The notes under the pieces were generated by a model. That model searched no databases. It was not told where the DNA came from and worked only from the letters and a program-made list of their open reading frames with translations. Below, in pieces: positions 21,943-48,695 of a DNA stretch of 64,000 nt. The stretch spans positions 124,001 through 188,000 of IMG/VR virus record IMGVR_UViG_3300024358_000009; one strand, written 5' to 3'. Position 1 is the stretch's first letter; every line of letters starts with the position of its first letter. The position numbers and the translations under genes were made by a program.

Positions 21943-21945
21943 ATC

Positions 21946-22045: not shown

Positions 22046-22089
22046 ATTCTTATAAATATTTTTACCTCTGTATCGAATAAGATTATATA

Positions 22090-28051: not shown

Positions 28052-28124
28052 GGGCGTGTAGACCAATGGCAGAGTCAAAGGACTTAAAATCCTTCAAGTA
28101 TGGGTTCGACTCCCATCACGCCTA
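28052..28124 (+). tRNA. Second tRNA-Leu (UAA), short variable loop, no encoded CCA
   Basis: Near copy of 21869-21942 with a compensatory acceptor stem GGGCGUG/CACGCCU. Confidence 0.92.
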
Positions 28125-32309: not shown

Positions 32310-32324
32310 AATATAAAGTTAATT

Positions 32325-32350
32325 AATGCCCCTTAATTGGGGCATTTTTT
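32325..32350. terminator. Terminator between convergent genes
   Basis: AATGCCCC-TTAATT-GGGGCATT followed by a T run. Confidence 0.75.
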
Positions 32351-32978
32351 AATTATGGAACATCAATGGAAAATTAATAAAATGTATGTTAGTTTTATTT
32401 TCTTTTATAATTTTTGTTATGTATGAAAAGTCTGCTCCATATCCAAAAGATTTCCATTCAGTATTATTTACTAATTCCCTTTTTAAAAAATAACAACATA
32501 AATCAATAGTTCCATTTTTTGGAATTGGTTTTGTGGATTTTAATATTTTGTATAAATAAGGATCATTTTTTATTCTATGTATGCATTCAGATATAACTAC
32601 ATTGCACTCTTTTGTTAAAAATATATTATTCAATAAGTTTAATATTTTTGGATTATAGTAATTATCTTCATTTGTAAAACCAAGTATGTCACAATCTGTT
32701 TTAAGTGCATATTCTCTTCTATATTCATGGCCCCAATGATTTAATCTTTCATTAGACTCAAAACATTTTATTTTTTCCGATAAAAGTTCCAGTTCATAAT
32801 ATTTTTTTCTAATTTTTTCATCTGTTATTTTTCCATCATGAACTATATTTAATTTCCAATTTTCATAAGATTGAGATAAAAATGAATAAACTAAACAGTA
32901 TAATTTATTGATTCTATTTGGTTCATCGTTTAAATATGAAGCTACTGAAAAACCAAAACTTAAATTTGACATATGCAT
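32349..32978 (-). CDS. Glycosyltransferase family 2-like protein
   Basis: Motifs SFLSQSYENW...VHDG, WGHEYR and FTNEDNYY. Confidence 0.7.
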   Translation of the reverse strand: MHMSNLSFGFSVASYLNDEPNRINKLYCLVYSFLSQSYENWKLNIVHDGKITDEKIRKKYYELELLSEKIKCFESNERLNHWGHEYRREYALKTDCDILGFTNEDNYYNPKILNLLNNIFLTKECNVVISECIHRIKNDPYLYKILKSTKPIPKNGTIDLCCYFLKRELVNNTEWKSFGYGADFSYITKIIKENKTNIHFINFPLMFHN

Positions 32979-32998
32979 CCTTGTTTTTTGGAATGTGA

Positions 32999-33658
32999 AT
33001 GATAAATCATTTTATCGAAACTAGATTTAATTTAAAGTATTCTTTTATAAAATATAAGAAGCATTTAAATGAAAATTGGTTAAATTATAGATTAGAATTA
33101 TTTAATAAATTCTGCGCCCCATCAGTTTTAGGACAAAAAAACAAAAACTTTTTTTGGATGATTAAATGTGATTCAGAAACACCAAATGAAATCTTAAACA
33201 AAATAAAAATAGATGATAGAATACATATTTATTTTAATAAAGATGAAAATTTAAATATAAGAAAAGAAATTTCTAATTTAAACCATCCATTTGTTTTCTC
33301 TAGATTTGACAGCGATGATATTTATAGAAATGATTTTACAGAAGAAATAAAAAATAATTCTTCAGTATATGAAGACGAATATCTTATAGATATAAATTAT
33401 TCATCTTTTGATTTATCAAAAAATTTATTTTGTCAAAAAAATATTTATCCTTCTCACTTTGTAAGTATAAAAACAAATAATATTGAAAAAGACATTTATG
33501 AAGATAAACATGTTAATTATTCAAGTAAATATAAAATATTTAAAATAAAAGAAAATTTAGCACTAGAATTAATACATGGAAAAAATATATCTAATAAATT
33601 TAATGAAAATGCAAAAAAAATAGATATAAATTTATCTGATTATAATATACTGCTGTAA
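32999..33658 (+). CDS. Putative rhamnosyltransferase-family glycosyltransferase
   Basis: Motifs HFIETRFN, RLELF..FCAPSV..Q...NF.W and SRFDSDD. Confidence 0.75.
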   Translation: MINHFIETRFNLKYSFIKYKKHLNENWLNYRLELFNKFCAPSVLGQKNKNFFWMIKCDSETPNEILNKIKIDDRIHIYFNKDENLNIRKEISNLNHPFVFSRFDSDDIYRNDFTEEIKNNSSVYEDEYLIDINYSSFDLSKNLFCQKNIYPSHFVSIKTNNIEKDIYEDKHVNYSSKYKIFKIKENLALELIHGKNISNKFNENAKKIDINLSDYNILL

Positions 33659-33709
33659 ATAATTACTGACAATTGGCGAATAAATATTAAGCAACAAAAG
33701 GAGTTTATT

Positions 33710-36700
33710 ATGAAGATAGAAATGGATGGCGAAAAGTATCTTCTTTTTGCAAGTGAAAATGTGAAGCGTGTTTTTTTAAGCAATAAGGTAGCCATATTTG
33801 ATTTAGTAAAACTTTATAAAAATAAACCTTTTACTAAAACTGGCACATGTACAATTGTTAATGTTGGGAATACAAATGTCAGTATTTTAAATATAAAAGC
33901 TTTAGATTTTGAAACTCAGGAAAACATTAATTGTTTTGTGTTACATTGCGTAGGAAATTATAAAGAATTAACGCCAGTAGCAGCTAATAAATGGTCAGTA
34001 ACTCTTTATTGTGGACATAAAGCGATTATTGATGAAACAGTTGATTCGATTGATAAAGATCATAAAGTTCATTGTTTTTTATGTGAGAAGAAAAATTAGG
34101 AATGAGCTATGTCAGAACTAATTATTGAGGAATTAAAAAAAAGAATTCAAGAACTTGAAGAAAAGAATAAAAAGCTGCGTAAAGCATGTCAAAGAGCGTT
34201 TGACTTCGTTGATGACGAAGACAACAATAAAATAGTAGTTAAAATGCCTTTCTCATTTGGTCTGCATTGTGATTTAGCCGAAGCTTTAGATATTCGTGAC
34301 CTAAAAAATTTGAAGGATTAATATGGAAAAGGAAATGATAAATTTAATTTTTGCGATGTATCAGTTGTCTGGTGGGAATAATGGAGAATTGTTTGCGAAG
34401 CTAACAGTAGAAGAACAAACTGTTTTAAGGTCTATCGTTTTTTCAAAGTTATTTTTTAATACAGAGATAAAAAATGGCAATTAAAAGAAACTGCTTCTGC
34501 TGCAATAAAAAACTCAAAGGTTTATATACTAATATAGAAGATCCTCCGTATGACGCTGTATCTTTTTCATCAGATGGAAAATATGGAAGTTCTATATTTG
34601 ATCCATATGAAGAAAATGCACGAATAGAAATTTATATATGCGATGAATGTCTTAAAAAGAAAGCGAAGCTTTCTTATTATTATGAACTAGAACAAAAAAT
34701 AGAGATTAAAAATATTCAGTCTTTTGACAAGAAACTAAAACAGGATGAAGCTATTATTAAAGAAAGAACTAAAAAGTTAATAGCTGCCGTAAAGAAATTT
34801 AAGAGGATGAAGAAAAATGACAAGAGAAGAAGCTGAAATTTATTGCGAAGAAATTGGAGCAAACCCTTTGTATGCAAATGGTTATGACGATTGTATAATT
34901 GGAGTTGGAAGAATATTTCATGATTATAAAATAATCTATGACACTAATAAGATTTTACATAAAATGGTAGAAGAACAAGGCATGACAACTGAAGAAGCTA
35001 TAGAGTTTTACGAATATAATATGGTTGGTGCATACATGGGCGAAGGCACTCCTATATTTTTGGAAAATCATAATGAACAATGAGCAGTTAAACAAAATAA
35101 AAGAAACATGGAAACCAAAAGTAGATAAGCATTATGGAGAATGCTATTTGGCAAATGCAAGATGTGCAATACATTTTCTTTTACTAGAAATAGAAAGGCT
35201 AAAAAATGACATTGCCACAAGAAAGAACAAGGAGTGTGATACAAACTAGAGATTTTTTAATAGATTTAATTAATCCCAAAAAAACGCCAAAAGTTCCAAA
35301 ATACATAAGACTTTCAGCAAAAAGACTTTTAAGACATTTTCCTTGGGATTATCATTTAAAACAAATATCTAAAAAAAATCCTGATGTATTCGGTGACATA
35401 AATGACATATTTACTTTTTCTATTACTAATAATTTTAAGTTTTCTAACGATAAAAAGTATAAGAAAAAATCAAAAAATACTAAAAATCTTTGAAGAAGAG
35501 GCGAATAAGATTATAGATGAAAAGTGCGGTTTAGAAATATTAAAAGTTATTTGTTCAATAGAAAATAAAATACGGAAAATAAAATGACAGATGAAGAAAA
35601 AATTAAATTAGTTATAGAAACAAGAGATGTTTTTGGAGATCCAAGAAGATTGTGTTTGCTTCTTGTTGATGAGATTAAAAATCTAAGATTAGAACTGGAA
35701 AAAGCAAAAGCATATGACTACAGATCCTATGCACCGAATGTTTGGACGCAAGCAGGAGAAAAATATGTTTTCCTGCAATAAAAAAGATGGCAATGGATTT
35801 AAAATTGGTTTTAAGAATGGATATACTTTGTCAGTAAGATTTGGAGTAAGAAACTACTGCGAAAATTTAGGCAAAGAAGATAAGAAATTTTTAAAATCAA
35901 GTGATGCAGAAATAGCCATTATTGATCCAGCAGGAAAGCTAATGCAATTAAATGATCAAGATGCAATATTGGCAAATCAATCAGCAGAAGATTTAGTAGA
36001 AACGCTTTTTAAATATTTTATGATGAAAAATGAAACCTATTAATGTTTTTTTATTAGTGATTTTAGCATTGGTTGGAAGTTATTATAAACAATATATTTA
36101 TCACAAGGAAATTGGTGAAAAATTAATGAATAACCTTTATGAGATGGAACAAAGAGTTATACCAGACGAATCTATTAATGATGTTCCTGCTTATTCAGAA
36201 AAACAAATGATAAAGATAAAAGTAATTCATGAGTGCCAACAACTTATTTATGAGGAGTTTAAGTTATGGAAGTAACAGAAGAATTTATTCAAGAGATTGA
36301 AAAAGACATGCAATCCAATAATGGAAATTGGGTTTCTAATGAAAATGTTACCAAGCTTATTGCAGAAATAAGAAGATTGAAAGGGCTTATTAAGCCATGT
36401 TGTCAGAAAAAGAATTGCGTGAAATAGAAAATAGATTATACAGAGCAACTCCTGGTCCTTGGGTTTCTTCGTATTCTGAAAATGGAAAAACAAGCATATA
36501 TTCAGAAAGTAAGGAGCGAGCATATTTTTATCATGGAGAATGGATTGCAGATGTATCTACGGAAGAAGACTTAAAATTTTTAGTTAATTCTATAGAAGAT
36601 ATACAAAAGCTTTTGAAAGAAGTTTATAGGCTAAAGACTATTTTGGATAAAAACATGTATAAAGAAATTGTTGAAGCATTTTGTCATAAATTAAGTGGAA

Positions 36701-37021
36701 AAACAGATGACAAAAAGTGAGTTATTCAAAAGATTAAATGACATTCACATATCAAAAGTATATGTAATGTTTTCTTATGAAAATAAAGAAATATCAATAA
36801 TAAGTAATGTAATTATCATGCAAGATCAAAGTTATGTTGTTGATTGGGGCGATGATGTTTATAGTGATAAATCATACATAGTAGAACCGATATATAAATA
36901 TGATTTTCAAAATTATGATAGTGTAGATGGATTATTAACATGGGATGTATTAAAGAATAAAGTTATTATAAGTGGTGAAAAAAAGATTGTTACTCTAGAA
37001 AAATTTTCTGAAGAAGTATAG
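33710..37021 (+). CDS. Run of small hypothetical genes
   Basis: Adjacent or overlapping ORFs of 60-130 aa, several with Cys pairs. Confidence 0.6.
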
Positions 37022-37030
37022 TAAATATAT

Positions 37031-37101
37031 GGGCGGTAGTAGTTGATTCACTAGGCAGGGAAACTTCTACTAATTAGCCTTGTTGGCTAAACCGCCCACC
37101 A
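37031..37101 (+). ncRNA. tRNA-like RNA, copy 1 (acceptor stem plus ACCA, no anticodon arm)
   Basis: GGGCGGU...UAGCC-UUGUU-GGCUA-A-ACCGCCC-ACCA. Confidence 0.65.
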
Positions 37102-37114
37102 AACAAGGATTATC

Positions 37115-38023
37115 ATGGAAGAAACTTTAAAAGTTTATGATATGTTTGCTGGTATTGGTGGTTTTTCTCTGGCTTTTCAACAAGCTGGTAATTACGAAAT
37201 AACAGCCAACGCAGAAATAGACAAATATCCTAGCGAAGTATTAAAAAAGAATTTTCCATCTATACCAAACTTTGGCGATGTTACAAAAATAACATATCAA
37301 TCAAATCAGTTTGATGTGATCGTGGGCGGATTTCCTTGCACAGACATTTCTATAGCAAGTAAAACAAAGGACGGTATTTATGGAAAAAGATCTATTCTCT
37401 GGAAAGAATTCTTTAGAGCAGTCACAGAAGTCAGACCAAAATATTGTGTCATTGAAAATGTCTTTATGCTCCTTAGAAGAGGGCTTAACACAATTCTCTC
37501 AGACCTTGCCAAAATCGGGTACGATGCGACTTATACGACCATTGATGCACAATTCTGCGGAACACCACAAAGAAGACGCAGAGTTTACATTCTCGGAGTC
37601 CGTGATGGAATCTCCGCCAACGCCGATATCTTCCAACTTGGAGAGCGTAGTACAACAGAATGTGAACGAAAAGTACAGTCTGTCAAAAAAAGCTTTAAGT
37701 GGTATTTTGAGCAGAGCGAAAAAAGGGAACAAGCCTTTGCCTACTTTACTCGCCAAAGAAGTGATCAATTTGATGAATGCGGAGTATCCTCCACATTAAC
37801 TAAAAGAGATTATAAATCTTTTACAGATTTAGTAGTGTCTAAAGGAAATATACGAAGAGTAACGCCAACAGAAAGACTTAGACTGATGGGTTTTCCCGAT
37901 GATTGGCATTTAACTAATGCCTCAGATACAGATAAGTATAAATATTGTGGAATGCATGTTCCTTCAGTTAAATATATTGCGGAATGCTTAAATAAATATC
38001 ATAAGGAAACTATTAAGGATTGA
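37115..38023 (+). CDS. C5-cytosine DNA methyltransferase family protein
   Basis: Motifs I (DMFAGIGG), IV (GGFPC), VI (ENV), VIII (PQRRRRVY) and IX (RRVTPTERLRLMGFPDDW); atypical motif X. Confidence 0.92.
   Translation: MEETLKVYDMFAGIGGFSLAFQQAGNYEITANAEIDKYPSEVLKKNFPSIPNFGDVTKITYQSNQFDVIVGGFPCTDISIASKTKDGIYGKRSILWKEFFRAVTEVRPKYCVIENVFMLLRRGLNTILSDLAKIGYDATYTTIDAQFCGTPQRRRRVYILGVRDGISANADIFQLGERSTTECERKVQSVKKSFKWYFEQSEKREQAFAYFTRQRSDQFDECGVSSTLTKRDYKSFTDLVVSKGNIRRVTPTERLRLMGFPDDWHLTNASDTDKYKYCGMHVPSVKYIAECLNKYHKETIKD
37380..37799 (+). CDS. Nested alternative-frame ORF inside the methyltransferase gene (possible second subunit)
   Basis: 139 codons open in AT-rich DNA; AAGGA 8 nt before the ATG; contains YSLSKKALSGILSRAKKGNKPLP. 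Confidence 0.55.
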   Translation: MEKDLFSGKNSLEQSQKSDQNIVSLKMSLCSLEEGLTQFSQTLPKSGTMRLIRPLMHNSAEHHKEDAEFTFSESVMESPPTPISSNLESVVQQNVNEKYSLSKKALSGILSRAKKGNKPLPTLLAKEVINLMNAEYPPH

Positions 38024-38661
38024 TCATGTTTGATTTTGCAAAAGCAGCGCCAACTTTTAATGAACACATTAAAGGTCAATTATTTTGGCATGAAGATTTT
38101 TTAAGACATTTCTTGCCAGAAATTGCATCTGTATATATGGAACCAGATAGTGTGGTATATGATTTTGGGGCAAGTACAGGCAATGTTGGATTAGCATTAA
38201 GAGATAAAATAAAAGAAAGAAATATTGAGTTTTATGCTATTGAAAAATGTCAAGAAATGGAACCGTACTATATTGGTGATTATCAAAGTCTAATAATAGG
38301 CGACATGCTAGATATATGTATAAGAGAGTTTTCTTTCGCAACAAGTATTTTAGCATTGTGCTTTATTCATCCAAGTAAAAGAACTGACTTTATAGAAAAA
38401 CTTAAACACAAATGTAAGAATGGTGGAGCATTTTTAATTTTAGAAAAAATGATGCCTCATGGTGGCTATCTTGGTACTGCCTTAAATCGTATTACTTGGA
38501 GAAATAAATTAGAAAATGGCGAGTCTCTTGAACAAGTTGTATACAAAGAACTTTCTCTCAGCGGTGTACAATATCCATTGTGCGAAAAAGAACTAGAAGG
38601 ATTTAAACTTATTTGGGCGTATGGTGATTTTCGTTCTTATATTTGGACTAATGGCTTTTAA
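38020..38661 (+). CDS. CmoA-like SAM-dependent enzyme (candidate carboxy-SAM synthase)
   Basis: FDF...F.EHI start, VYDFGASTG, L.FI...R and GGAFLILEK; overlaps the methyltransferase stop. Confidence 0.7.
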   Translation: MIMFDFAKAAPTFNEHIKGQLFWHEDFLRHFLPEIASVYMEPDSVVYDFGASTGNVGLALRDKIKERNIEFYAIEKCQEMEPYYIGDYQSLIIGDMLDICIREFSFATSILALCFIHPSKRTDFIEKLKHKCKNGGAFLILEKMMPHGGYLGTALNRITWRNKLENGESLEQVVYKELSLSGVQYPLCEKELEGFKLIWAYGDFRSYIWTNGF

Positions 38662-39044
38662 TATATGGCGTATTTATATACGCTATGGAATATAGACCTT
38701 ATATAGAACTGTTGATTTGGTATATAATTTATTTTTTAATTATGTACTCTATGGAAGAAGTTCTAAATGAAAAGTAGTTATTGTCGAATAAACTAATATA
38801 ACCCTAACTCAAGGAGGATTTATGTTCAAGTTTCTTAAGAATATATTTGTAAAGTCTGAAGATCAAATCAATTTAGCTATATTAAAAACAAAGTTGCAAG
38901 ATCTAGAAATAGATAACAAGGATTTTGAAATAGTAAATAATAACTTAAAAGATGAAAATAAGGAACTTACTAATAGAATAAAAGAACTAAACATTAAGCT
39001 TGATTCAATTAAAATTATATTGGATTCTATTAACAAATAATTAT

Positions 39045-39107
39045 GGGCGGTAGCAATTTACCGTGGTGGGATAAGTTGCGTGATCTTGTTGATCAAACCG
39101 CCCACCA
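39045..39107 (+). ncRNA. tRNA-like RNA, copy 2
   Basis: GGGCGGU-A-GCAAUUUA...UAAGUUGC-G-UGAUC-UUGUU-GAUCA-A-ACCGCCC-ACCA. Confidence 0.65.
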
Positions 39108-39121
39108 AGATAGGAGATAAA

Positions 39122-39316
39122 ATGGAAACAGGGAATTTAGTTTTTACAAGAAATTTTGGAGAGTCTTTTACTATTTTCACTCCATCTGGAAACATAGTAA
39201 TAACACTTCTTGCAGATAAGATAAGCATAAATAAAGCAAAAGTAAAAATAAATGCTCCAAAAGATTTTAAAATTATGAGAAATGAAATTATCAATACAAC
39301 GAGGGATAAAAAATGA
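39122..39316 (+). CDS. csrA: CsrA/RsmA family RNA-binding protein
   Basis: LVFTRNFGESFTI...VKINAPKDFKIMRNEI matches the CsrA pattern; TAGGAG RBS before the ATG at 39122. Confidence 0.8.
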   Translation: METGNLVFTRNFGESFTIFTPSGNIVITLLADKISINKAKVKINAPKDFKIMRNEIINTTRDKK

Positions 39317-40593
39317 ACAGGCGACACTTTTTACAGCATACAACAGAATTTGCTTCTCTTGCATTAGTATCTAATCTATATGCACAGCAAGAAACCATAA
39401 AGAAAAAGGGAAAAAGACTCATTGTGCTTTGGATGAGTGGTGGCCCAAGTCATATGGATTTATGGGATTTGAAGACAGGAGAATCAACTGGTGGAGACTT
39501 TAAACAGATCAAAACTTCTGCAAACGGAGTGCAGATTAGTGAGGTATTGCCAACAGTTGCTGAACAGTTCAAACACTTGGTGGCTATTAGATCTTTGGTT
39601 ACTAATGAAGGCAGTCATGAGCGTGGCACATTCTTAATGAATACGGCCAAGCAACCAAACCCAGTAGTGCAATATCCAGCTATGGGCGCAGTTGTATCTT
39701 CTATGATTGGCTCTAAAGAGTTGCCATTACCTAATTTTATTGGAATTGGTGGAACTGCACAACGCATTGGGCCAGGATTCCTTGGCGCAATGTACACTCC
39801 TTTTGTTGTGCAAAATCCTGGCGTTCCTCCAGAAAATATAAAGCCACCATCAGAAATTGGCAATGAAGAAGAGCGTCTTAGAAGAAGGCAGAGATTATTC
39901 TACGGAATAGAAGATGAGTTTGCTGCAAAGATAATGCCTCATGTAAAAGGTGCAAAAGACAGAGAAAGTTTAGGTAATGTCGCACAATCACATGCTTCTA
40001 TATATGGTAAAGCATTTGATCTAACTATTTCGCCACTTAGAACTGTATTTGAAATAAAGAACGAAAGCCAAGCGACTATAGATGCTTATGGCGGTAGGAT
40101 GAATCAGTTTGGCATGGGATGCCTTCTTGCAAGAAAATTAATTGAGAAGGGAGTTAGTTGTGTTCAAGTGGATCTCGGCGGATGGGATAATCATAATAAT
40201 ATCTTTTCTACTATTAGGAATGGTAATGGCCCTCGGCTTGATAAAGGTTTTGGAAACCTTGTAAAAGAACTAAACGATATTGGTCTTTGGAAAGATACTG
40301 TAGTTTTATGGATGGGCGAATTTGGTCGTACACCTAAGATTAATCAAAATGGTGGACGAGATCATTGGGCAAGATGTTGGTCTATAGTAGTAGGCGGAGG
40401 TTCCATTAAGGGTGGACAAGCTTATGGTTCTACTAGCAAAGATGGTTTAGACATTAAGGATAAGCCATGCTCAATAGGCGATGTATATGCTACTGTTTAT
40501 AAAGCTTTAGATATGGATCTATCTGCTCAAATTAGAGACAACATTGGACGACCCATGGCTATTACAGAAGGAAAACCTCTAGATATCTTTTAA
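39313..40593 (+). CDS. DUF1501 family protein with Tat signal
   Basis: Motifs MNRRHFL, LWMSGGPSHMDLWDLK, CLLARKLIEKGV, GGWDNH, WMGEFGRTPKIN and GRDHW. Confidence 0.92.
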   Translation: MNRRHFLQHTTEFASLALVSNLYAQQETIKKKGKRLIVLWMSGGPSHMDLWDLKTGESTGGDFKQIKTSANGVQISEVLPTVAEQFKHLVAIRSLVTNEGSHERGTFLMNTAKQPNPVVQYPAMGAVVSSMIGSKELPLPNFIGIGGTAQRIGPGFLGAMYTPFVVQNPGVPPENIKPPSEIGNEEERLRRRQRLFYGIEDEFAAKIMPHVKGAKDRESLGNVAQSHASIYGKAFDLTISPLRTVFEIKNESQATIDAYGGRMNQFGMGCLLARKLIEKGVSCVQVDLGGWDNHNNIFSTIRNGNGPRLDKGFGNLVKELNDIGLWKDTVVLWMGEFGRTPKINQNGGRDHWARCWSIVVGGGSIKGGQAYGSTSKDGLDIKDKPCSIGDVYATVYKALDMDLSAQIRDNIGRPMAITEGKPLDIF

Positions 40594-40933
40594 AGGAACA
40601 ATCATGCTTAAAAAAAATGCAAGGATGACAAAGTGTTTAGGGTGGTGCGATAAAGAATTTTTATCACAAAATCCAATTTATTATAGAATTTGCCCTAAGT
40701 GTAAAGATAGGTATAATAAAGCAGCAGAAATTAAATCAGTTGCTAAATATAAAAAAGAAAAAGATTAACTATCTTATCAAATGTTAAGATGTGTAATATT
40801 TTTATTTTTAAAATAGTCATAGCTGATATTGATAAAAAAAATAAATCTGTTAATTTTTTGTCTTGGTTGTCGAATAAAAGAGTAGATGGTTAGTGTGTTG
40901 CTAATCGTTGTTTTTTCTTTAGGAGGAAGTATC

Positions 40934-41161
40934 ATGTTGAGTTTTGTTATGGCTATTGCCATTGCTACGAGTTCTGAGACTTTGGATGGTATCAGGCTTC
41001 GTGGTGGTTCTTCTTGCTCTAATGGAAGTTGCGGTGTTGCTGCTGCTCCAGTAGTAGAAAAGAAGGCTGAAACTTCAACAAAGCAGGAAGTAGTTCAGAA
41101 CTCTTGTGGTTCTGGCGGATGCAGTTCAAGGCATCGTGCTTTTAAGCTTCGTTGTCGTTAA
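40934..41161 (+). CDS. Small secreted Cys/Gly/Ser-rich peptide
   Basis: Own promoter; GGAGG RBS; hydrophobic leader; CSNGSC and CGSGGC motifs. Confidence 0.6.
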   Translation: MLSFVMAIAIATSSETLDGIRLRGGSSCSNGSCGVAAAPVVEKKAETSTKQEVVQNSCGSGGCSSRHRAFKLRCR

Positions 41162-41171
41162 TAAATGCAAG

Positions 41172-41200
41172 AAGGGGGCGAAAGCCCCCTTTAAGCTTTT
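41172..41200 (+). terminator. Intrinsic terminator
   Basis: AAGGGGGC-GAAA-GCCCCCTT. Confidence 0.8.
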
Positions 41201-41398
41201 AAGGAGCTATAATGAACTGCAAAACATGCAATGAAGAAATTCCAGACTATATTTACTTAGAAGAAAGTACCATAGAATGGCAATGTTTTGATTGTTCTTT
41301 AAAAGAAAATATGAAATGTGAAATATGCAATGAAATTTTAAATATAAATAAGATAGATAAGGCGAATAGTATATTAGGTGACAGTTGGATAGAAATGT

Positions 41399-41773
41399 GT
41401 GACAGTTGTGCGGAGGAATTTAATGAAGGTAGGGAGACTTACAATATTAGAAGAAGTAGAATCTAAAAAAATGCCATCTGGACAGATTTGCAAGATGGTT
41501 AAAGTTTTATGTGATTGTGGAAAAGAAAAAATTATTTATTTAAACAACATAATGAATGGAAGAACTGTAAGTTGTGGATGTTACAAAAAAGACTCTGTTA
41601 TTAAACAAAACAAAGCTAATAAAGAAACTACAATATGGGTAGAATACAAAGACGAAATAATAACATTCGTTGAATTTTGTAAAAAAAATAATCTTGATTA
41701 CTTCTTTGCTAAGAATAGATATATTATGGGGTGGGATTTGGAAAGCATCATACAAATACCAAAACTGAAATAG
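41399..41773 (+). CDS. Homing-endonuclease-derived protein without an obvious HNH core
   Basis: GRLTILEE...CDCG...SCGC N-terminal module. Confidence 0.55.
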   Translation: MTVVRRNLMKVGRLTILEEVESKKMPSGQICKMVKVLCDCGKEKIIYLNNIMNGRTVSCGCYKKDSVIKQNKANKETTIWVEYKDEIITFVEFCKKNNLDYFFAKNRYIMGWDLESIIQIPKLK

Positions 41774-43465
41774 CCATGTCATATTTTTTTAATGTTTGGA
41801 TAGAATACATCGGTTGTGATAATGTAAAGAAAAGAAAGTTTTTAAAAAAAATTAATGATTATAATGATTGTTTACCATTATTATTAGAAAGCGAGTATAT
41901 AAAAGAATACCTTTTTATGCCAAAATGCATTGTTATATTAGAGGATACATTTGGAAATGACATGAGACTAAAACCATTGTTTGAAAATGATAAGTTTTTT
42001 CTTTTGTGTGAATAATGAAAAATGTTTTTTTCAAATTAAATAACGAAAAGTTTTATGTTATAGCTGGAGATACAGCTAAACGAGAAAAAGAAAAATTAAA
42101 GTGTTCTTGGAAAACATTGCTTAGTGTTTTATGTAAAGAAAATTTTCCAAATATAAAAAAGGTGACAGAAAAAACAGAAAATAATCATATTGTTACAATA
42201 CCATTTTTTGAGGAGTTAATTTTTTTTGTAATGACAATTATGTATAAAGATAAAAAAATTTTTGTCGTAACAGCAAATGAAAAGGTTAAAAAGTTTAAAT
42301 TAAAAAAATTTGGTAAGTGGATAGCGGAATTAGAATGTGGGCATACTTTTTTAATGGATAGCGGAGTAGATGATTACAGATTTATAAAAAGAATATTTTG
42401 TCCTACATGTATGGAGAATACCGATGGTTCAGTTTTTAAATGAATTAAAAACATTTATAGAAAACAAAAGCGATGAATGCAAACTAAAACCAGAATTAAA
42501 AATTACTGAATCAAAAATTTTGTTTATTACATCAAATAACTATTTAATATCAAAATATTTTTTAGATGTATGCGAAAAGTTTTTGAATAATAAGAATTTA
42601 ATAATTACTGAAAATAAAAAAACTTGTTTGAATTTGGAAAAATCATTAGAAGATATTGTTTCTATTATAAAAGAATCGTGTCATTATGGATTTGATCATG
42701 CAATATTATTGAATAATTATGATATTTTTTTTGATGATGAAACATGTATTAGTGTTGCAAAAGAATTAATTGATTATTCTAAAAATTCAAATGATAACTT
42801 AAAAATGATTATAATTTTGACAAACAGATCAAAAACTATAGAGCCGTTTTTAATGCACAGTCCAAATCATTTAAAAGTAAATCAAGCATGGTGTCTCGGT
42901 AAATATATTTGTAGGAAAATCGAAGAAAAGAGTATGGAGCAAATACTTTCTGAAACGATTAATGCAGTTAATGATACTCTTAATTGTAAATATTATTAAA
43001 GGCATTTCTATTGGTGTGTTTATTTATTTTATGATTAAATTTTTAAGGAGAGGAATATGAAGTCTCTAAGATCTGATCTACACAGCGAAATTAGTACAAC
43101 CAGCGGTTCTTTGGTTTTAATACCTCTAGAAAAATTTCAAGAACTAATAGGTTTTTCAGACGATGAAGATTTTGAAATTGTATCTGAAATAATTGATAAC
43201 GGCGGAGATATTATAAACATAAATCCATATGTAAATTTAGAGGTAAGAAAAAGATTTACTTTAAATGCAGACGGCACAAATGATACGGTTATTCAAATAG
43301 CACCAAAAAATGAATCTAAAGACTTTGTAAGACTTTTAAACAAGGATGAAGAGACATTAGAAGAATTTTCTTTGCGTAAGAAAAAAGAATTAAAAATGAA
43401 TACCGAAGAAATGATTAAGTCATTTACAGATATTAGAAACGAATACTTAGAAAAGATGGATATAA

Positions 43466-44080
43466 ATGATTAACAAAGAAAAAATAATGCATAGAATAAA
43501 AAAAGGAAATGAATTAGCAGAATATGTAGCTAAGTATCTGAATCATAGATATGGATATAATTTTAAAAAAGTGGGATTACAAGAAGATAAAGAATCAATG
43601 ATTGATTATAGGTGTGATAAATATAATAAAACTGCTCAATTTAAATGTCGTGATAACCAATCTGACATAATTTATGAATGTTGGAAATTTATACCAAGAG
43701 AAAACAATCAATTTGAAAATGTTCCTGGTAGAGATGTAAGGACAAAAGCGGATTTTTATATTTGTTTAAATTCATCTAAGACAAAGATAATTGTTGCAGA
43801 AACGAGCAAGATTAAAGAAATAGCAAAAAATTCTATTAATGAAAAAACAATAGAAAGCGTTGCTAATATATACAAAGAGGCTAAATTAAAACCGACAAAA
43901 AGTAAATTTTTAAAATCAAATTCAAATTTGTCTGAGGTTTGTTTTAAGATAGATGAAGGAAAAGATACAAATGAATATGGAAAAATATTAATTTTTATAC
44001 CATTTGATTCAATAAAAGAAGCAAAAGTAATCGACTTAAAACCAAAAGAAAACATATTAGATGAACGGAGTTGGAACTAA
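43466..44080 (+). CDS. Putative PD-(D/E)xK-like nuclease
   Basis: Pattern G..AE...ID...QFK. Confidence 0.4.
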   Translation: MINKEKIMHRIKKGNELAEYVAKYLNHRYGYNFKKVGLQEDKESMIDYRCDKYNKTAQFKCRDNQSDIIYECWKFIPRENNQFENVPGRDVRTKADFYICLNSSKTKIIVAETSKIKEIAKNSINEKTIESVANIYKEAKLKPTKSKFLKSNSNLSEVCFKIDEGKDTNEYGKILIFIPFDSIKEAKVIDLKPKENILDERSWN

Positions 44081-45321
44081 TGCCATACTTTTCAATAGTA
44101 ACACCTACGAATAATGGACAATATTTGCCAAGACTGTCTAGGTCTTTAGCAAATCAAGCTTTTAAAGATTTTGAATGGGTAGTTTTACCAAATGGCAATG
44201 CTACTATTGATTTGGATTCTTTAAGTTTAAAACCAAGAATTATAAATTCATCCAAACCAGATTCAAAACTAATAGGTTTATTTAAAAAAGAAGCGTCAAT
44301 GGCTGGGAAAGGTCATGTTATTGTCGAAGTTGATCACGATGATGAATTAACTCCAGATTGTTTAGAAGAGTTGCATAAGTGTTTTAATGAATCTGAATCT
44401 ATAGATTTTGTTTACTCAAATTGTGCAGAGATAGACTTTAATGGAAAACCATTTGTTTATTCTGATGTATATGGATGGAGAAATAGACCATTTGAATATA
44501 ATGGAAAAAAACTTTTAGAATTGATTTCTTTTGAACCTTCAGCAGCTTGCTTTTCAAAAATATGGTTTGCACCAAATCATGTTAGAGCTTGGAAGAAATC
44601 TTTTTATGAGAAAATCGGTGGACATAATGAAAAAATGGATGTCTTAGATGATCATGACATTCTTTGCAGAACATATATACATGGAAATGTAAAACACTTG
44701 GATAAATGTCTTTATATATATTATAGGCATAAAGGAAATACATGTTATGGAGAGAAAAACGCTTTTATTCAAGAGGAAACACTAAATATACACGATAGAT
44801 ATATATATCAATTAGCAGAAAAATGGTCAGACTTAAACGGTCTTTTAAAAATAGATCTATGTGGCGGTTTTAATAGTCCTGCTGGATATAAATCTGTTGA
44901 TCTAGAAAACGGAAATATCGTACACGATTTAAATAATCCTTGGCCTTTTGAAGACAATTCTGTTGGTGTTATAAGGGCGCACGATGCATTAGAGCATTTA
45001 AAAAACCCAATCCATGTTATGAAAGAAGCTTATCGTTGCTTATCTCCTTTGGGATGGTTTTTAACACAAACTCCATCAACTGACGGAAGAGGAGCTTTTC
45101 AAGATCCAACTCATATAAGTTTTTGGAATAGTAATAGTTTTTGGTATTATACTAAAGCAGAAACCGCAAAATATATTGGAACACCAGTAAGATTTCAATT
45201 AAATAGAATTAAAAATTTCTTCCCAACAGAATGGCATAAAACTCACAACATCTTATATGTTAAAGCGGACTTATTAAAAATATCAAACGATATAAGAATA
45301 CCAGGAGAAATATCTATTTAG
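44071..45321 (+). CDS. GT2 glycosyltransferase fused to a SAM-methyltransferase-like domain
   Basis: FSIVTPT, EVDHDD and DDHDILCR in the N-terminal part; IDLCGG, HDALEHL and AFQDPTH in the C-terminal part. Confidence 0.85.
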   Translation: MELMPYFSIVTPTNNGQYLPRLSRSLANQAFKDFEWVVLPNGNATIDLDSLSLKPRIINSSKPDSKLIGLFKKEASMAGKGHVIVEVDHDDELTPDCLEELHKCFNESESIDFVYSNCAEIDFNGKPFVYSDVYGWRNRPFEYNGKKLLELISFEPSAACFSKIWFAPNHVRAWKKSFYEKIGGHNEKMDVLDDHDILCRTYIHGNVKHLDKCLYIYYRHKGNTCYGEKNAFIQEETLNIHDRYIYQLAEKWSDLNGLLKIDLCGGFNSPAGYKSVDLENGNIVHDLNNPWPFEDNSVGVIRAHDALEHLKNPIHVMKEAYRCLSPLGWFLTQTPSTDGRGAFQDPTHISFWNSNSFWYYTKAETAKYIGTPVRFQLNRIKNFFPTEWHKTHNILYVKADLLKISNDIRIPGEISI

Positions 45322-45757
45322 CAATTTTTAAAAATGCTTCTTGTTGTTCTTTCGGGCCAGCAAATTTAATTGAATTTGATCCATACTTCCTTATTAAAAC
45401 AAGCATGTGTTTGGCTATATAATTTATTACAGATTTTCCTAATTCTGAATCAGATGCATTTTCCCACACTTCTTGACCTAGCATGTGGGCAAAACCAAGA
45501 TCATTTTGTTTTGGTGCTGGATAAAACATTAAACCAAGATTATTGGGTCTAATGGTTTCATCGCCTGGCAAAATACCTAAAACCCAAGAACAAGACCACT
45601 TTCTACATATTTCCGGTCTTGTATCATAAATCATACAGCCTTTGTTTTGGTGATGACAATTTGTATATTCTGGCTTGTTTAGTTCTTGAACAATTAAAAT
45701 TGTGCAACAAACATCACAATCACTACAATGTCTATCAGCCAATGGTAAATTGATCAT
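45314..45757 (-). CDS. YkgJ-like CxxCxxCC protein
   Basis: CSDCDVCC...GCMIYDTRPEICRKW. Confidence 0.8.
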   Translation of the reverse strand: MINLPLADRHCSDCDVCCTILIVQELNKPEYTNCHHQNKGCMIYDTRPEICRKWSCSWVLGILPGDETIRPNNLGLMFYPAPKQNDLGFAHMLGQEVWENASDSELGKSVINYIAKHMLVLIRKYGSNSIKFAGPKEQQEAFLKIAK

Positions 45758-45760
45758 ATA

Positions 45761-46273
45761 TTATCCATGCCAAATTTTTTCTTCTGGACCCAAAAGTCTA
45801 GCCAAGGTAAACAAAAAATCACTCAATCTATTTATATATACAACTATTTTCTTTAGGTTTTGATGAACTTCCATTAATTTGACTAAATCAATTTCAACCC
45901 TTCTACATACTGCTCTTGCTAGATGAATTTCACAATGATTAAAAGGTATTATAAAGTTTTTCAATGGCTTTAAAAGCTTAGTCATGTCGTCAATTTTGCC
46001 TTCTATTTCTTTAATATGCTTGTCATCTATTCTTGCTTCGCCCGTAGCTATTTCAGCGCCTATATCAAATAAATGTTTTTGTATGTCTACAATAAAATCA
46101 TAAGCGTTTTGAATTTTTAATTCTAAAACATATTTTTGATTTACTAAACCTATTGAAGCGTTAAGTTCATCAACACTTCCTAACAATTGAATGTGTGGGT
46201 CAGTTTTTGGAACACGCCCAACTTTAGGCAAAAAGGTTGTTCCATCATCTCCTGTTTTAGTATAAATTTTCAT
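45761..46273 (-). CDS. pduO: ATP:cob(I)alamin adenosyltransferase, PduO type
   Basis: Motifs KIYTKTGDDGTT, GSVDELNA, HLARAVCRRVE and YINRLSDFLFTLAR. Confidence 0.93.
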   Translation of the reverse strand: MKIYTKTGDDGTTFLPKVGRVPKTDPHIQLLGSVDELNASIGLVNQKYVLELKIQNAYDFIVDIQKHLFDIGAEIATGEARIDDKHIKEIEGKIDDMTKLLKPLKNFIIPFNHCEIHLARAVCRRVEIDLVKLMEVHQNLKKIVVYINRLSDFLFTLARLLGPEEKIWHG

Positions 46274-46913
46274 TCTTGCTCCATTCCATTATTTTTAATT
46301 TTGATTCCATACCTATTTTTGTAAATGGAAAACCATGAAAACCAAATGGTTTATCAAAAAACTCAGGTCTTTTATGTTCGATAGAAAATTTAAAAGCTGT
46401 TTTAATGTCTGGGAATTTAAAACCATTATCTACTAATTCATTATATGATTGATTGCATATTTCTAAATCTTCATTGAATATAATTTGTTTATCTTTATAT
46501 TTATTAGATATAAACTCTAAAAGTTTTTTTGATCTTAAACTAAATCCGCCATTACCAACTTTATTTATGTATTCATCATTTTTCCAAGGTGCGCCTATAT
46601 AATCATATTCTAAGAATGAATCATCCCATGAGTTTGGATTTATTATAAATCCATCGTGTTGAATCACTAAAACATACTTAGTATTAATAAATTTATTCAA
46701 ATCTACTAAAATAAATTTACTATATTCTTCTTTGCTTTTTATTTTATTGACTTGTATATGTTTTATTTTGTTTGTTTTTACTTTTTGTTCATCAGATATA
46801 AAAATAGATTCTTTAAAATTAAAGAATTGCATACTATACAACATAGCTGCAATCGCTTTTTTATGATTAACGCAATCTACAGAACAAATAGTTATGTCTT
46901 CAAAAAAATTCAT
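46257..46913 (-). CDS. DUF5672-like glycosyltransferase-related protein
   Basis: Motifs VIQHDG, YDYIGAPW, VGNGGFSLRS, NED and FGFHG. Confidence 0.8.
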   Translation of the reverse strand: MNFFEDITICSVDCVNHKKAIAAMLYSMQFFNFKESIFISDEQKVKTNKIKHIQVNKIKSKEEYSKFILVDLNKFINTKYVLVIQHDGFIINPNSWDDSFLEYDYIGAPWKNDEYINKVGNGGFSLRSKKLLEFISNKYKDKQIIFNEDLEICNQSYNELVDNGFKFPDIKTAFKFSIEHKRPEFFDKPFGFHGFPFTKIGMESKLKIMEWSKNENLY

Positions 46914-47400
46914 AAAGACATATTAATCTTTTTCTATTAGAGTCAATAGATATTTTTTCAAAAGTTGGTTTTATTTCAAACCATTTCAATAATGTATTTT
47001 CATCTATATTATGATGACAGTTATTTGGTTTATTCCACTTATATGGAACTGATATTATAGCTTTGTTAACTATTTTTTTTATTTGATTAAATACTTCTGT
47101 TTGTTTGTTTTTAAAATGTTCAAAAGTTTGTAAACATATTAATAAATCAAATCTTTCTTTAAAATCCCAAGGGGTTTTTGTGCAATCAAAAACATGATTG
47201 ATTTCACTATTATATTTTGAATCTATTCTTGTTGAATTTAAACATAGCGGAAAAGATGAGCAACCTAATTCAAGAACAGACTGAGGACTTAAACTCTTTG
47301 CTAGTTCTATAGCATCATTATAATAATTCCATCTATTTATAAAATATTTATCTTCTAAACACTTTTTATTATAGTCTGCTTTTGTTATAAATTTAATCAT
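46900..47400 (-). CDS. Class I SAM-dependent methyltransferase
   Basis: Motifs SVLELG and FDLLICLQTFEH. Confidence 0.7.
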   Translation of the reverse strand: MIKFITKADYNKKCLEDKYFINRWNYYNDAIELAKSLSPQSVLELGCSSFPLCLNSTRIDSKYNSEINHVFDCTKTPWDFKERFDLLICLQTFEHFKNKQTEVFNQIKKIVNKAIISVPYKWNKPNNCHHNIDENTLLKWFEIKPTFEKISIDSNRKRLICLYEFF

Positions 47401-47789
47401 TTTTTAGGAGATTTAGTTTTAATGCCTAATTTTTTATATACATTTCTAGCTTTTGGATTATCATCTATAGCTAATATAATTTTATCTTTTATTGATTGTG
47501 CATGTTTTCTTTTAGACTCTAGCTGATCTTTTGGACTTCCACCAATGTTATTCATCATTAAGCGATTGTATTTCAATCCTGCTTTTTTTAATGATTTAAC
47601 AGTTTCTGATCTATTAGATTCTGGTCTTCCAGTAATCATATATATTTTATGATCTTTTGACAATTCATTTATATAATCAACCATTTTTTTTATTGGATAT
47701 ATACCATTTCTTAAAACGGTATTATCTATATCTACAATAACAACAGAAGATACAGAAAAAAACTGTTTAATTTGGTTTGCAATCGACAT
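47397..47789 (-). CDS. HAD-family phosphatase (PNKP phosphatase-like)
   Basis: Motifs VDIDNT, ITGR and IDD. Confidence 0.8.
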   Translation of the reverse strand: MSIANQIKQFFSVSSVVIVDIDNTVLRNGIYPIKKMVDYINELSKDHKIYMITGRPESNRSETVKSLKKAGLKYNRLMMNNIGGSPKDQLESKRKHAQSIKDKIILAIDDNPKARNVYKKLGIKTKSPKK

Positions 47790-47965
47790 TTGTTCTTCCC
47801 ATAGTTATATTTTTTGTTGCAACAACATCCTTATTAGTAAATTCCCATATTAAGCCATTATTTAATATAACTGTAAATATTTTTTCTATCTCAGTACCAT
47901 ATTCAGTTACGAGCCAAATTCTTCCTCTTCCTTTAGGTGTTTCAACTTCTAATTCTTGTCTTGGC

Positions 47966-48646: not shown

Positions 48647-48695
48647 AATAAATACTACACCCTAATAAGCGAATAAAATGTTAAAGGAGTAAGTT

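What the first reader, a model, noticed from the sequence alone, without database searches (positions are those of the whole stretch)
39122..41161. Planctomycete-type host genes in a phage: CsrA, Tat-exported DUF1501 and a Cys-rich peptide
Seen: csrA overlaps the DUF1501 start (ATGA) behind a tRNA-like RNA, and DUF1501 has phage-like AT-rich codons. Known: DUF1501 is greatly expanded in Planctomycetota and related phyla and its function is unknown; few phages of this phylum are characterised. Inference: a host assignment, and a long-retained periplasmic auxiliary gene that offers a handle on DUF1501 function.
Basis: partly seen in the sequence, partly recalled or inferred. Interest (0 to 1): 0.6.

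Follow-up and report, generated by a model that had tools for sequence, protein, structure and literature searches.

The report
Phage csrA–DUF1501 operon from Planctomycetes
An uncultured freshwater phage carries a conserved, transcribed operon that pairs a small RNA-binding regulator with an exported enzyme of unknown function captured long ago from Gemmataceae (Planctomycetota) bacteria, which points to its host and gives a compact system for studying that enzyme family.

Summary
csrA (39122-39316) overlaps a Tat-signal DUF1501 gene (39313-40593) by ATGA, inside a phage with portal, terminase and head genes.

DUF1501 is host-derived. The phage copies form one clade nested in a Gemmataceae/Gemmatales orthologue group (63-70% identity), with codons recoded to phage composition (GC3 0.27) and dN/dS 0.06.

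The csrA-DUF1501 pair occurs in 26 viral loci from 25 metagenomes. It is absent beside the two cellular orthologues whose neighbourhoods I read.

The "tRNA-like RNA" is not a tRNA. It is a covarying Y-shaped leader with an invariant GGGA (GGA) in one hairpin loop and a second GGA in the ribosome-binding site. That fits CsrA autoregulation, which is untested.

CsrA is a divergent phage-type protein of unresolved origin. The Cys-rich peptide (start revised to 40934) belongs to a tiny family seen on phage or phage-like contigs, not a host gene family.

A Planctomycetota host is supported by the DUF1501 tree and by one prophage-like relative on a Gemmataceae contig. No CRISPR spacer match was found.

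The enzyme has an alkaline-phosphatase-superfamily fold but lacks the sulfatase formylglycine motif. Its substrate is unknown.

The 206-kb record is a two-strain chimera of a genome of about 149 kb.

The parts
38822..39040 (+). Small coiled-coil protein (72 aa) that always precedes the leader and csrA
   Evidence: Conserved position in both arcs of the record and in group-2 phages. dN/dS 0.24. No Pfam or PHROG family.
39044..39104 (+). Y-shaped structured leader RNA. P1 is a closing stem. P2 is a hairpin whose loop shows GGUGGGA. P3 is a hairpin with loop UUGUU. A ribosome-binding site containing GGA follows at 39113-39115.
   Evidence: MFE -29.3 kcal/mol, z -4.3. The same architecture is reachable in 10 homologous leaders. 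98% of cells paired and 11 of 20 pairs with compensatory changes; 0 of 500 shuffles reached the observed score. No tRNA call or Rfam match.
39122..39316 (+). Divergent CsrA-like RNA-binding regulator (64 aa)
   Evidence: Pfam CsrA 37.3 bits (cut-off 27). phrog_9500 'CsrA-like regulator'. Below the NCBIfam equivalog cut-off (32.7 against 73). dN/dS 0.06. 36% identical to a Gemmataceae CsrA, with the LV-x-TR and APK...R-x-EI blocks kept.
39313..40593 (+). Tat-signal DUF1501 protein (426 aa), an alkaline-phosphatase-superfamily fold; start overlaps the csrA stop
   Evidence: PF07394 at 2.2e-92. VIA-align Z 17-18 to ENPP6, PafA, ENPP4 and choline sulfatase. 91% aa identity and dN/dS 0.06 between the two arcs. 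Single phage clade inside the Gemmatales orthologues. RNA-library contigs cover it at 100% identity.
40604..40768 (+). 54-aa CxxxC...CxxC zinc-ribbon-like ORF, found only in this phage sub-clade
   Evidence: Present in both arcs at 47% identity, dN/dS 0.49. Absent downstream of DUF1501 in group-2 phages. No family.
40934..41161 (+). Cys-containing small peptide (75 aa from the conserved start). It has a hydrophobic N-terminus, an invariant SSCSxGxC block and a C-terminal CR.
   Evidence: Alignment A6. 19 representatives among 1.84 billion proteins, 17 of them 62-91 aa. Not found in 5 candidate host genomes. Its own RNA-library contigs have the highest word depth of the stretch.
41172..41191 (.). 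GC-rich hairpin just after the peptide ORF; terminator-like
   Evidence: Pattern scan. RNA-library contigs of the peptide end at 41206-41240.
37030..37098 (+). Second copy of the leader RNA, in front of the C5 DNA methylase cassette
   Evidence: Covariance-model hits (27.8 bits; 55.5 bits). Same P1 sequence and ACCAA tail, with compensatory P2 and P3.
37115..38661 (+). Two-gene methyltransferase cassette: C5 DNA methylase at 37115-38023 and a phrog_4752 methyltransferase at 38020-38661. It lies elsewhere in the sister strain.
   Evidence: Pfam DNA_methylase 2.3e-56. phrog_4752. The homologous cassette is at genome 2022-3530 in the other arc, with no leader in front of it.

Best explanation
The locus is a conserved phage operon with three linked parts.

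1. A structured 5' leader shows a GGA motif in a hairpin loop.
2. It precedes a divergent CsrA-like RNA-binding protein.
3. The csrA stop overlaps the start of a Tat-exported DUF1501 enzyme.

Shown:
- DUF1501 was captured once from a Gemmataceae-type (Planctomycetota) bacterium.
- It has since been recoded to phage codon usage and kept under strong purifying selection in two diverged phage sub-clades.
- csrA is glued to it only in phages.
- RNA libraries from river samples contain the region.

Inferred:
- During infection, phage CsrA rewires host translation.
- By bridging the loop GGA and the ribosome-binding-site GGA, CsrA limits its own synthesis and that of the coupled DUF1501.
- DUF1501 is exported folded by the host Tat system. 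There it adds to the host's own single-copy orthologue, a periplasmic metallo-enzyme of the alkaline-phosphatase superfamily.
- My preferred guess for the chemistry is phospho-ester (or sulfo-ester) hydrolysis that feeds phage DNA synthesis.
- The phage's host is a freshwater Gemmataceae-like planctomycete.
For: Anatomy.

Conservation:
- csrA lies directly upstream of DUF1501 in all 26 viral loci at 69-100% DUF1501 identity, from 25 metagenomes.
- No csrA lies beside the cellular orthologues.

Selection: dN/dS is 0.06 for both genes, against 0.18-0.49 for seven of the eight neighbours compared and 0.10 for the eighth.

Origin:
- The phage clade has SH-aLRT 100 and sits inside the Gemmataceae/Gemmatales orthogroup (SH-aLRT 99).
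- GC3 is 0.27 against 0.46-0.83.

Host:
- The Gemmataceae-family contig G096:C5 carries cellular genes followed by a block collinear with this phage's head, portal and terminase genes (71%, 52% and 57% aa).
- Candidate hosts have TatC and 3-6 csrA genes.

Fold: Z 17-18 to NPP/PafA phosphatases and S1 sulfatases.

Leader:
- Covariation in all three helices, with an invariant GGGA in the P2 loop.
- It is found only before csrA and before one duplicated site.

Expression: four metatranscriptome runs hold contigs identical to the region, with uneven depth.
Against: - No biochemical evidence exists for any substrate.
- The canonical sulfatase C/S-x-P-x-R motif is absent. The sulfatase D-H-G metal block aligns to E-F-G, so the active site is atypical and no nucleophile could be assigned.
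- CsrA binding to the leader is inferred from motifs only. Any AGGAG-type ribosome-binding site contains GGA. Two relatives (L017, L025) lack the P2 hairpin altogether.
- Host evidence is indirect. No spacer-like match was found for 40 kb of the window in 252 Gemmataceae-family genomes.
- The head protein belongs to a very large environmental family: 5238 hits, some from Tara ocean samples.
- That head protein was found in only 1 of 252 family genomes and 0 of 401 sampled genomes of the phylum.
- RNA-library contigs cannot exclude carried-over DNA.
Confidence: 0.6

Rival explanations
1. DUF1501 acts on the cell envelope rather than on nutrients. As a periplasmic alkaline-phosphatase-superfamily transferase or hydrolase, it would modify a surface or periplasmic polymer. 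That could block superinfection or prepare lysis.
For: Structural neighbours include envelope-modifying enzymes of the same superfamily: EptA, MCR-1, LtaS, BcsG and YejM at Z 14-16. The gene sits among small secreted or membrane-like phage ORFs.
Against: Those enzymes are membrane-anchored, whereas this protein has only a Tat signal. The host already has a near-identical orthologue in most family genomes. That fits reinforcement of a host function better than a new modification. The best Z scores are to soluble NPP/PafA phosphatases and sulfatases.
Confidence: 0.2
2. The leader RNA is a general 5' element, such as an mRNA stabiliser, an RNase processing site or a promoter-proximal structure. 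On this view it has no link to CsrA, and the GGA motifs are incidental.
For: A copy also precedes the methylase cassette. Two relatives keep only P1 and P3 and have no GGA loop. In group-2 leaders an alternative fold competes with the P2+P3 form.
Against: GGGA is invariant in the P2 loop across leaders whose stems have changed by compensation. In two whole phage records the element occurs only before csrA, apart from the one duplicated copy. From general knowledge of CsrA: the loop GGA and the ribosome-binding-site GGA lie about 44 nt apart, within the range a CsrA dimer can bridge.
Confidence: 0.3
3. The phage does not infect Planctomycetota. DUF1501 would then be an old transfer from that phylum, kept in a lineage that now infects another AT-rich freshwater bacterium.
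For: Phage GC is 0.32, while the closest candidate hosts are at 0.43-0.45 and most Gemmataceae at 0.55-0.69. No spacer match was found. The head-protein family is very widespread.
Against: A Tat-exported enzyme at 70% identity to a Gemmatales-specific orthologue, held at dN/dS 0.06, makes most sense in a cell that uses that enzyme. A relative of the phage lies on a Gemmataceae contig. A second, largely unrelated phage group took a different DUF1501 from another Planctomycetota clade. Two tRNA-Leu(TAA) genes fit a phage that is more AT-rich than its host.
Confidence: 0.12
4. The upstream RNA is a tRNA-like element, either a degenerate tRNA or a tRNA mimic.
For: In this strain's two copies a 7-8 bp closing stem is followed by ACCA.
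Against: ARAGORN makes no call. Rfam gives no tRNA match even at E<=5. There are only two inner hairpins, with no anticodon-like 7-nt loop or T-loop. The ACCA tail is missing in the sister strain and in all group-2 phages.
Confidence: 0.03

Closest known systems
DUF1501 / PSCyt (DUF1549-DUF1553) modules of Planctomycetes-Verrucomicrobia (Kamneva et al. 2012, PMC3542564)
   Same: Same Pfam family (PF07394), twin-arginine signal and expansion in PVC bacteria, with function unknown.
   Different: No PSCyt/PSD1 partner gene lies next to the phage gene or next to its cellular orthologues. This is a stand-alone orthologue conserved across many Gemmataceae-family genomes, and here it is carried by a virus and fused into an operon with csrA.
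CsrA/RsmA-like regulators encoded by phages and plasmids (PHROG phrog_9500; from my own knowledge, plasmid pQBR103 RsmQ)
   Same: A small CsrA-fold regulator carried by a mobile element, presumably acting on GGA sites in host or own mRNAs.
   Different: Very divergent: 37 bits to Pfam, below the NCBIfam equivalog cut-off. It is always translationally coupled to an exported enzyme gene and preceded by a dedicated covarying leader RNA. Neither feature is known to me for other phage CsrA genes.
Cyanophage phosphate-acquisition auxiliary genes (pstS, phoA; from my own knowledge)
   Same: A host-derived periplasmic or nutrient-acquisition gene kept by a lytic-type phage, recoded to phage composition. 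The enzyme fold is of the alkaline-phosphatase superfamily.
   Different: The substrate is unknown and the active site is atypical. The host phylum differs, and phosphate regulation has not been shown.
Type I (S1) formylglycine sulfatases
   Same: Shared alpha/beta core (Z 15-17.6). One alignable sequence block lies around the metal-binding strand.
   Different: No C/S-x-P-x-R formylglycine motif. The D-H-G metal block reads E-F-G. The protein uses Tat rather than Sec export.
CsrA autoregulatory leaders and CsrA-binding hairpins (E. coli csrA and glgC leaders; from my own knowledge)
   Same: One GGA in a hairpin loop plus one GGA overlapping the ribosome-binding site, upstream of csrA itself.
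   Different: It is a three-way-junction element with its own covariation pattern, it matches no Rfam family, and binding is untested.

Membership tests
CsrA (PF02599) | Sequence match above the curated family threshold | tested here: met
   Pfam 37.3 bits against a cut-off of 27, profile 2-50 of 53. phrog_9500 at 6e-6.
CsrA (PF02599) | Orthologue-level match to bacterial CsrA (NCBIfam equivalog) | tested here: not met
   NF002469 scores 32.7 bits against a cut-off of 73, and TIGR00202 scores 28.5 against 70.1. This is a divergent CsrA-like protein.
CsrA (PF02599) | Conserved RNA-binding blocks: N-terminal L-x-L-T-R, and C-terminal A-P-K...R-x-E-I with the critical Arg | tested here: met
   Kept in the pairwise alignment to a Gemmataceae CsrA and in all 12 distinct phage variants.
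CsrA (PF02599) | Binds GGA-containing RNA as a dimer | not testable with these tools
   Only candidate sites were seen.
DUF1501 (PF07394) | Full-length family match | tested here: met
   310.7 bits, profile 2-384 of 390. 63-70% identity to annotated DUF1501 proteins.
DUF1501 (PF07394) | Twin-arginine export signal | tested here: met
   N-R-R-H-F-L followed by a hydrophobic stretch. R3 and R4 are invariant in 37 sequences. Residues 1-31 are unstructured in the model. TatC is present in candidate hosts. Export itself was not tested.
DUF1501-PSCyt module (Kamneva 2012) | Adjacent PSCyt1/PSCyt2/PSD1 partner protein | tested here: not met
   No such gene lies near the phage gene or near its cellular orthologues.
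Alkaline-phosphatase superfamily | Core alpha/beta fold | tested here: met
   AF2 model pLDDT 75.7. Z 17-18, rmsd 3.1-4.3 A over 240-272 residues to ENPP6, PafA, ENPP4 and choline sulfatase. Foldseek probability 1.0 to sulfatases and LtaS.
Alkaline-phosphatase superfamily | Identifiable nucleophile (Ser/Thr/formylglycine) and bimetal ligands | tested here: inconclusive
   The invariant residues G43-G44-P45-S46, D49, D52, D292-N293-H294 and R349-D350-H351 are candidates. No residue-level structural superposition was available.
S1 formylglycine sulfatase | C/S-x-P-x-R motif | tested here: not met
   The motif is absent from the sequence (read). The invariant columns contain no such block.
S1 formylglycine sulfatase | D-H/N-G metal-ligand block after the central strand | tested here: not met
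   It aligns to E336-F337-G338.
tRNA / tRNA-like element | Cloverleaf recognised by tRNA models | tested here: not met
   ARAGORN finds only the two tRNA-Leu genes elsewhere. Rfam gives no tRNA hit at gathering score or at E<=5. Only two inner hairpins are present.
tRNA / tRNA-like element | Conserved 3' CCA end | tested here: not met
   ACCA occurs only in this strain's two copies and is absent from L001 and group-2 leaders.
Viral auxiliary (host-derived) gene | Embedded in a viral genome and nested phylogenetically in cellular homologues | tested here: met
   Viral hallmark genes lie on the same record, and the same module lies in a complete 141.8-kb genome with terminal repeats. Tree.
Viral auxiliary (host-derived) gene | Expressed during infection | tested here: inconclusive
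   Identical contigs occur in 4 metatranscriptome runs with uneven depth. Contigs cannot prove transcription or strand.

The most novel reading that the evidence does not exclude
The leader, CsrA and DUF1501 form a self-contained post-transcriptional circuit invented by a planctomycete phage lineage. The covarying Y-shaped RNA would be a new class of CsrA-responsive element, either an autoregulatory operator or a decoy for the host's several CsrA paralogues. It would time the Tat export of a host-derived enzyme. That enzyme's stand-alone orthologue would be a core periplasmic function of Gemmataceae. The phage operon would then be the first genetic handle on both DUF1501 chemistry and CsrA control in Planctomycetota.
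Probability: 0.25. Interest if true: 0.75.

Novelty: new variant of a known kind. Interest (0 to 1): 0.58.

Why it matters
DUF1501 is one of the most expanded protein families of unknown function in Planctomycetota and Verrucomicrobiota, and it has had no experimental entry point.

This locus singles out one stand-alone, highly conserved orthologue. A virus found it worth keeping for a long time, stripped of paralogues and partner genes. It is only 426 residues long, with a clear export signal and a defined set of invariant residues.

That makes it a good first target for expression, metal analysis, substrate screening and structure work.

The locus also gives sequence-based host evidence for a widespread uncultured phage lineage with genomes of about 140-150 kb. 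Few phages of Planctomycetota are characterised.

Finally, it adds a candidate new cis-regulatory RNA tied to a phage CsrA.

Tried and rejected
- **CRISPR-spacer matching.** I ran DNA searches with window 1-20000 and 30001-50000 against 252 Gemmataceae-family genomes. The only hits were gene homology: DUF1501, an epimerase motif and the head gene of G096. Nothing was spacer-like. Only two candidates per genome are scored, and metagenome-assembled genomes often lack arrays, so this is weak negative evidence.
- **CsrA phylogeny.** The word-index search returned only four phage relatives. Host CsrA paralogues score 17-28 bits against a phage-CsrA profile. I judged a 64-residue tree uninformative and did not build it.
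- **Divergent CsrA genes in G004.** Two divergent 66-aa csrA hits looked phage-like but lie on host-composition contigs. They are no closer to the phage protein than other host copies.
- **Head protein as host marker.** It was found in 1 of 252 family genomes and 0 of 401 sampled genomes of the phylum. The cluster look-up of NCBI-sourced head proteins gave no organism names.
- **First RNA model.** Model R1 on the whole record through the genome search found nothing. The rebuilt model R2 worked.
- **A GGGCGGTA word at window 24217.** It lies inside a coding region and has no partner strand, so it is a chance match.
- **Literature.** DUF1501 occurs in 12 papers, none of them on phages in any meaningful way. 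No paper on planctomycete phages carrying this gene was found.
- **Complex prediction.** Not used, because nothing suggests that CsrA and DUF1501 bind each other.
Full report
**What is there.** The window is bases 124001-188000 of a 206,326-bp IMG/VR virus record. It encodes a portal, a large terminase and a ribonucleotide reductase, and a major head protein. Mean GC is 0.32.

At the flagged place:
- A 64-codon CsrA gene lies at 39122-39316 (Pfam CsrA 37.3 bits, cut-off 27).
- It overlaps by ATGA a 426-codon DUF1501 gene at 39313-40593 (PF07394, 2.2e-92, near full length).
- DUF1501 opens with N-R-R-H-F-L and a hydrophobic stretch. The two arginines are invariant in 37 homologues.
- Two small Cys-containing ORFs follow. 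One is a 54-aa zinc-ribbon-like ORF at 40604-40768.

So the gene-level observation is correct.

**The record is a chimera, which gives a built-in comparison.**
- Self-BLAST shows that genome 149,670-206,319 is collinear with 283-58,947 at 75-80% identity.
- A 94.5-kb IMG/VR contig carries window 4001-24000 at 100% identity. It is then followed by the other arc, with the A-type DUF1501 where predicted.
- The shared 90-kb part therefore joins to either arc. The record is a walk through two co-occurring strains of a genome of about 149 kb, not a 206-kb phage.
- A related group-2 genome is complete at 141.8 kb with terminal repeats.

Both arcs carry the same module. Between them:

| Gene | aa identity | dN/dS |
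|---|---|---|
| DUF1501 | 91% | 0.06 |
| CsrA | 75% | 0.06 |
| Seven of the eight neighbouring genes | not tabulated | 0.18-0.49 |
| Eighth neighbour (the 124-aa ORF) | not tabulated | 0.10 |

**Origin of DUF1501.**
- The word search found thousands of homologues. The nearest cellular ones (63-70% identity) are named Gemmataceae or Planctomycetota.
- In one-genome-per-species contigs, the best 40 or so hits are nearly all Planctomycetota, mostly freshwater Gemmataceae/Gemmatales MAGs (Baikal, Mendota, Zurich, Erken). More distant hits are Pirellulaceae-type and Poribacteria.
- In a 90-row likelihood tree, the csrA-linked viral sequences form one clade (SH-aLRT 100). That clade sits inside the Gemmataceae/Gemmatales orthologue group (SH-aLRT 99).
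- Three other viral contigs carry a 41%-identical DUF1501 without csrA. They nest in a different Planctomycetota clade and share almost no other genes with this phage. That is a second, independent capture.
- Phage copies have GC3 0.21-0.27, against 0.46-0.83 in cellular orthologues. The transfer is therefore old and fully recoded.
- The cellular orthologue stands alone. It has no PSCyt/DUF1553 partner, no csrA and no conserved neighbours. This differs from the classic DUF1501 modules described by Kamneva et al. (PMC3542564).
- DNA-level matches to it occur in 136 of 252 genomes of the family.

**The operon is a phage invention.**
- All 26 viral loci at 69-100% DUF1501 identity come from 25 metagenomes. 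All have csrA directly upstream, overlapping by 4 nt in all but one (L024, an 11-nt gap).
- CsrA itself has diverged to 41-47% identity between the two phage sub-clades, while DUF1501 stays at about 70%.
- No deposited phage genome among 50,697 has a full-length DUF1501, and no PHROG family exists for it.

**CsrA.** It is a divergent member of the family.
- It passes Pfam and matches phrog_9500, but is far below the NCBIfam equivalog cut-offs.
- It is 36% identical to a Gemmataceae CsrA. The LV-x-TR and APK...R-x-EI blocks are kept and are present in all 12 distinct phage variants.
- Candidate hosts have 3-6 csrA genes each.
- Its origin cannot be resolved. "Planctomycete-type CsrA" is therefore not supported.

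**The upstream RNA.** The 61-nt stretch 39044-39104 folds stably (-29.3 kcal/mol, z -4.3).
- It is not a tRNA.
- All ten homologous leaders can form the same Y shape. P1 is a closing stem. P2 is a hairpin whose loop carries GGUGGGA (GCAGGGA in one copy). P3 is a hairpin with a UUGUU or GUGUU loop.
- On an 8-sequence alignment, 98% of cells pair. Eleven of 20 pairs show compensatory double changes. The covariation score is 0.61 against 0.25 in shuffles (0 of 500 as high). Slid controls pair at 29-45%.
- A covariance model finds the element three times in the record: before csrA in both arcs, and at 37030-37098 before the methylase cassette. It finds it once in the complete group-2 genome, before csrA. 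It found none among the top 150 candidates scored per genome in three candidate host genomes.
- In the sister strain the methylase cassette sits elsewhere, without the element. The second copy is therefore a duplication that came with a cassette move.
- A GGA in a hairpin loop lies about 44 nt upstream of a GGA in the ribosome-binding site. From general knowledge, this is the arrangement CsrA dimers use to repress translation, including of E. coli csrA itself.
- I therefore propose autoregulation that also throttles the coupled DUF1501. This is inference.
- Two relatives lack P2, and the DUF1501 ribosome-binding site has GGA in most but not all relatives.

**The enzyme.**
- An AlphaFold model (pLDDT 75.7) matches the alkaline-phosphatase superfamily. 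Z is 17-18 to ENPP6, PafA, ENPP4, ENPP7 and choline sulfatase. Other S1 sulfatases follow at Z about 15-17.5, and EptA/MCR-1/LtaS-type transferases at about 14-16.
- The sulfatase formylglycine motif is absent.
- The only block alignable by sequence puts E336-F337-G338 where sulfatases have D-H-G.
- The invariant residues G43-G44-P45-S46, D49, D52, D292-N293-H294 and R349-D350-H351 are the candidate site.
- TatC is present in candidate hosts.
- The substrate is open. I favour periplasmic ester hydrolysis that supplies phosphate (or sulfate) during infection, by analogy with cyanophage phosphate genes. I hold this loosely.

**Host.**
- The DUF1501 tree supports a Planctomycetota host.
- A 78.8-kb contig of a Gemmataceae-family genome also supports it. 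NCBI names its head-protein homologue as Gemmataceae.
  - Its first 38 kb encode typical planctomycete proteins: Ser/Thr kinase-WD40, HEAT, TPR and SNF2.
  - From about 47 kb to the contig end it is collinear with this phage's head and packaging block: head 71%, terminase 57% and portal 52% aa identity, plus tail genes.
- Caveats:
  - This is one genome of 252 in the family, and none of 401 sampled in the phylum.
  - The head-protein family is very large.
  - No spacer match was found.
- The samples are riverine and lake metagenomes, which matches freshwater Gemmataceae.

**The peptide.**
- The family is tiny: 19 representatives in 1.84 billion proteins, of which 17 are 62-91 aa.
- It has a hydrophobic N-terminus, an invariant S-S-C-S-x-G-x-C block and a basic tail ending in C-R.
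- It is present in both phage sub-clades at variable distance from DUF1501.
- It was not found in five candidate host genomes.
- Two divergent members lie on contigs whose called genes have no Pfam hit on record.
- It is not a host gene. Its function is unknown.

**Expression.**
- Four riverine metatranscriptome runs hold contigs identical to csrA, DUF1501 and the peptide.
- Word depth is uneven: about 12 over DUF1501, 26-70 over the peptide, and near zero in some neighbours. This fits RNA better than carried-over DNA, but contigs cannot prove it.

**Verdict.** This is a real, conserved, probably expressed phage operon. It joins a divergent CsrA, a new structured leader and a Gemmataceae-derived stand-alone DUF1501. 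It is a new variant of known themes: phage auxiliary genes and phage CsrA. It is of moderate to good interest as a handle on DUF1501 and on planctomycete phages.

Noticed in passing
whole record; window 1-25670 is the shared part and 25670-64000 the B-type arc: The 206-kb 'complete' virus record is a walk through two strains. Genome 283-58,947 and 149,670-206,319 are collinear at 75-80% identity. Another contig joins the identical shared part to the other arc. The true genome is about 149 kb.
   Followed up: yes
G096:C5 (loci L143-L148), contig positions about 47,000-78,816: A prophage-like block on a Gemmataceae-family contig lies next to typical planctomycete genes. It is collinear with this phage's head, portal, terminase and some tail genes (52-71% aa). 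It runs off the contig end, and no tRNA or integrase was seen at the boundary.
   Followed up: partly
L028, L029, L030 (IMG/VR contigs, GC 0.36-0.37): A second, largely unrelated phage group carries a different DUF1501 (41% identity, no csrA). It nests in another Planctomycetota clade, so this is an independent capture of the family by viruses.
   Followed up: partly
window 37030-38661: A C5 DNA methylase plus a second methyltransferase form a cassette that sits at different places in the two strains. Here it has its own duplicated copy of the csrA leader RNA, and the methylase starts with the same ATGGAA as csrA.
   Followed up: partly
window 21869-21942 and 28052-28124: Two tRNA-Leu(TAA) genes. 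This fits an AT-rich phage that decodes TTA in a host with higher GC.
   Followed up: no
window 40896-41240: In two RNA libraries the Cys-containing peptide lies on its own short contigs. Their word depth is 2-6 times that of DUF1501, and they end near a GC-rich hairpin at 41172-41191. It may be a separate, strongly expressed small transcript.
   Followed up: partly
window 38690-38866: One metatranscriptome contig runs from B-type sequence into A-type sequence of the coiled-coil gene, and another skips 155 nt (38690 to 38846). The two strains appear to recombine or vary here.
   Followed up: no
window 41212-41773: Two overlapping ORFs rich in CxxC pairs lie downstream. The second (41399-41773) matches HNH endonuclease PHROGs.
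   Followed up: no
window 964-1953 (- strand): The major head protein belongs to a very large, highly conserved environmental family: 5238 hits at 65-80% identity, including Tara ocean samples. It has no relative among 50,697 deposited phages beyond a 20% match to Bacillus phage G. This is a widespread uncultured lineage.
   Followed up: partly
G004:C76:10035-10190 and G004:C121:31317-31478: One low-GC Gemmataceae genome has six csrA-like genes. Two of them are weak-scoring 66-aa ones on host-composition contigs.
   Followed up: partly
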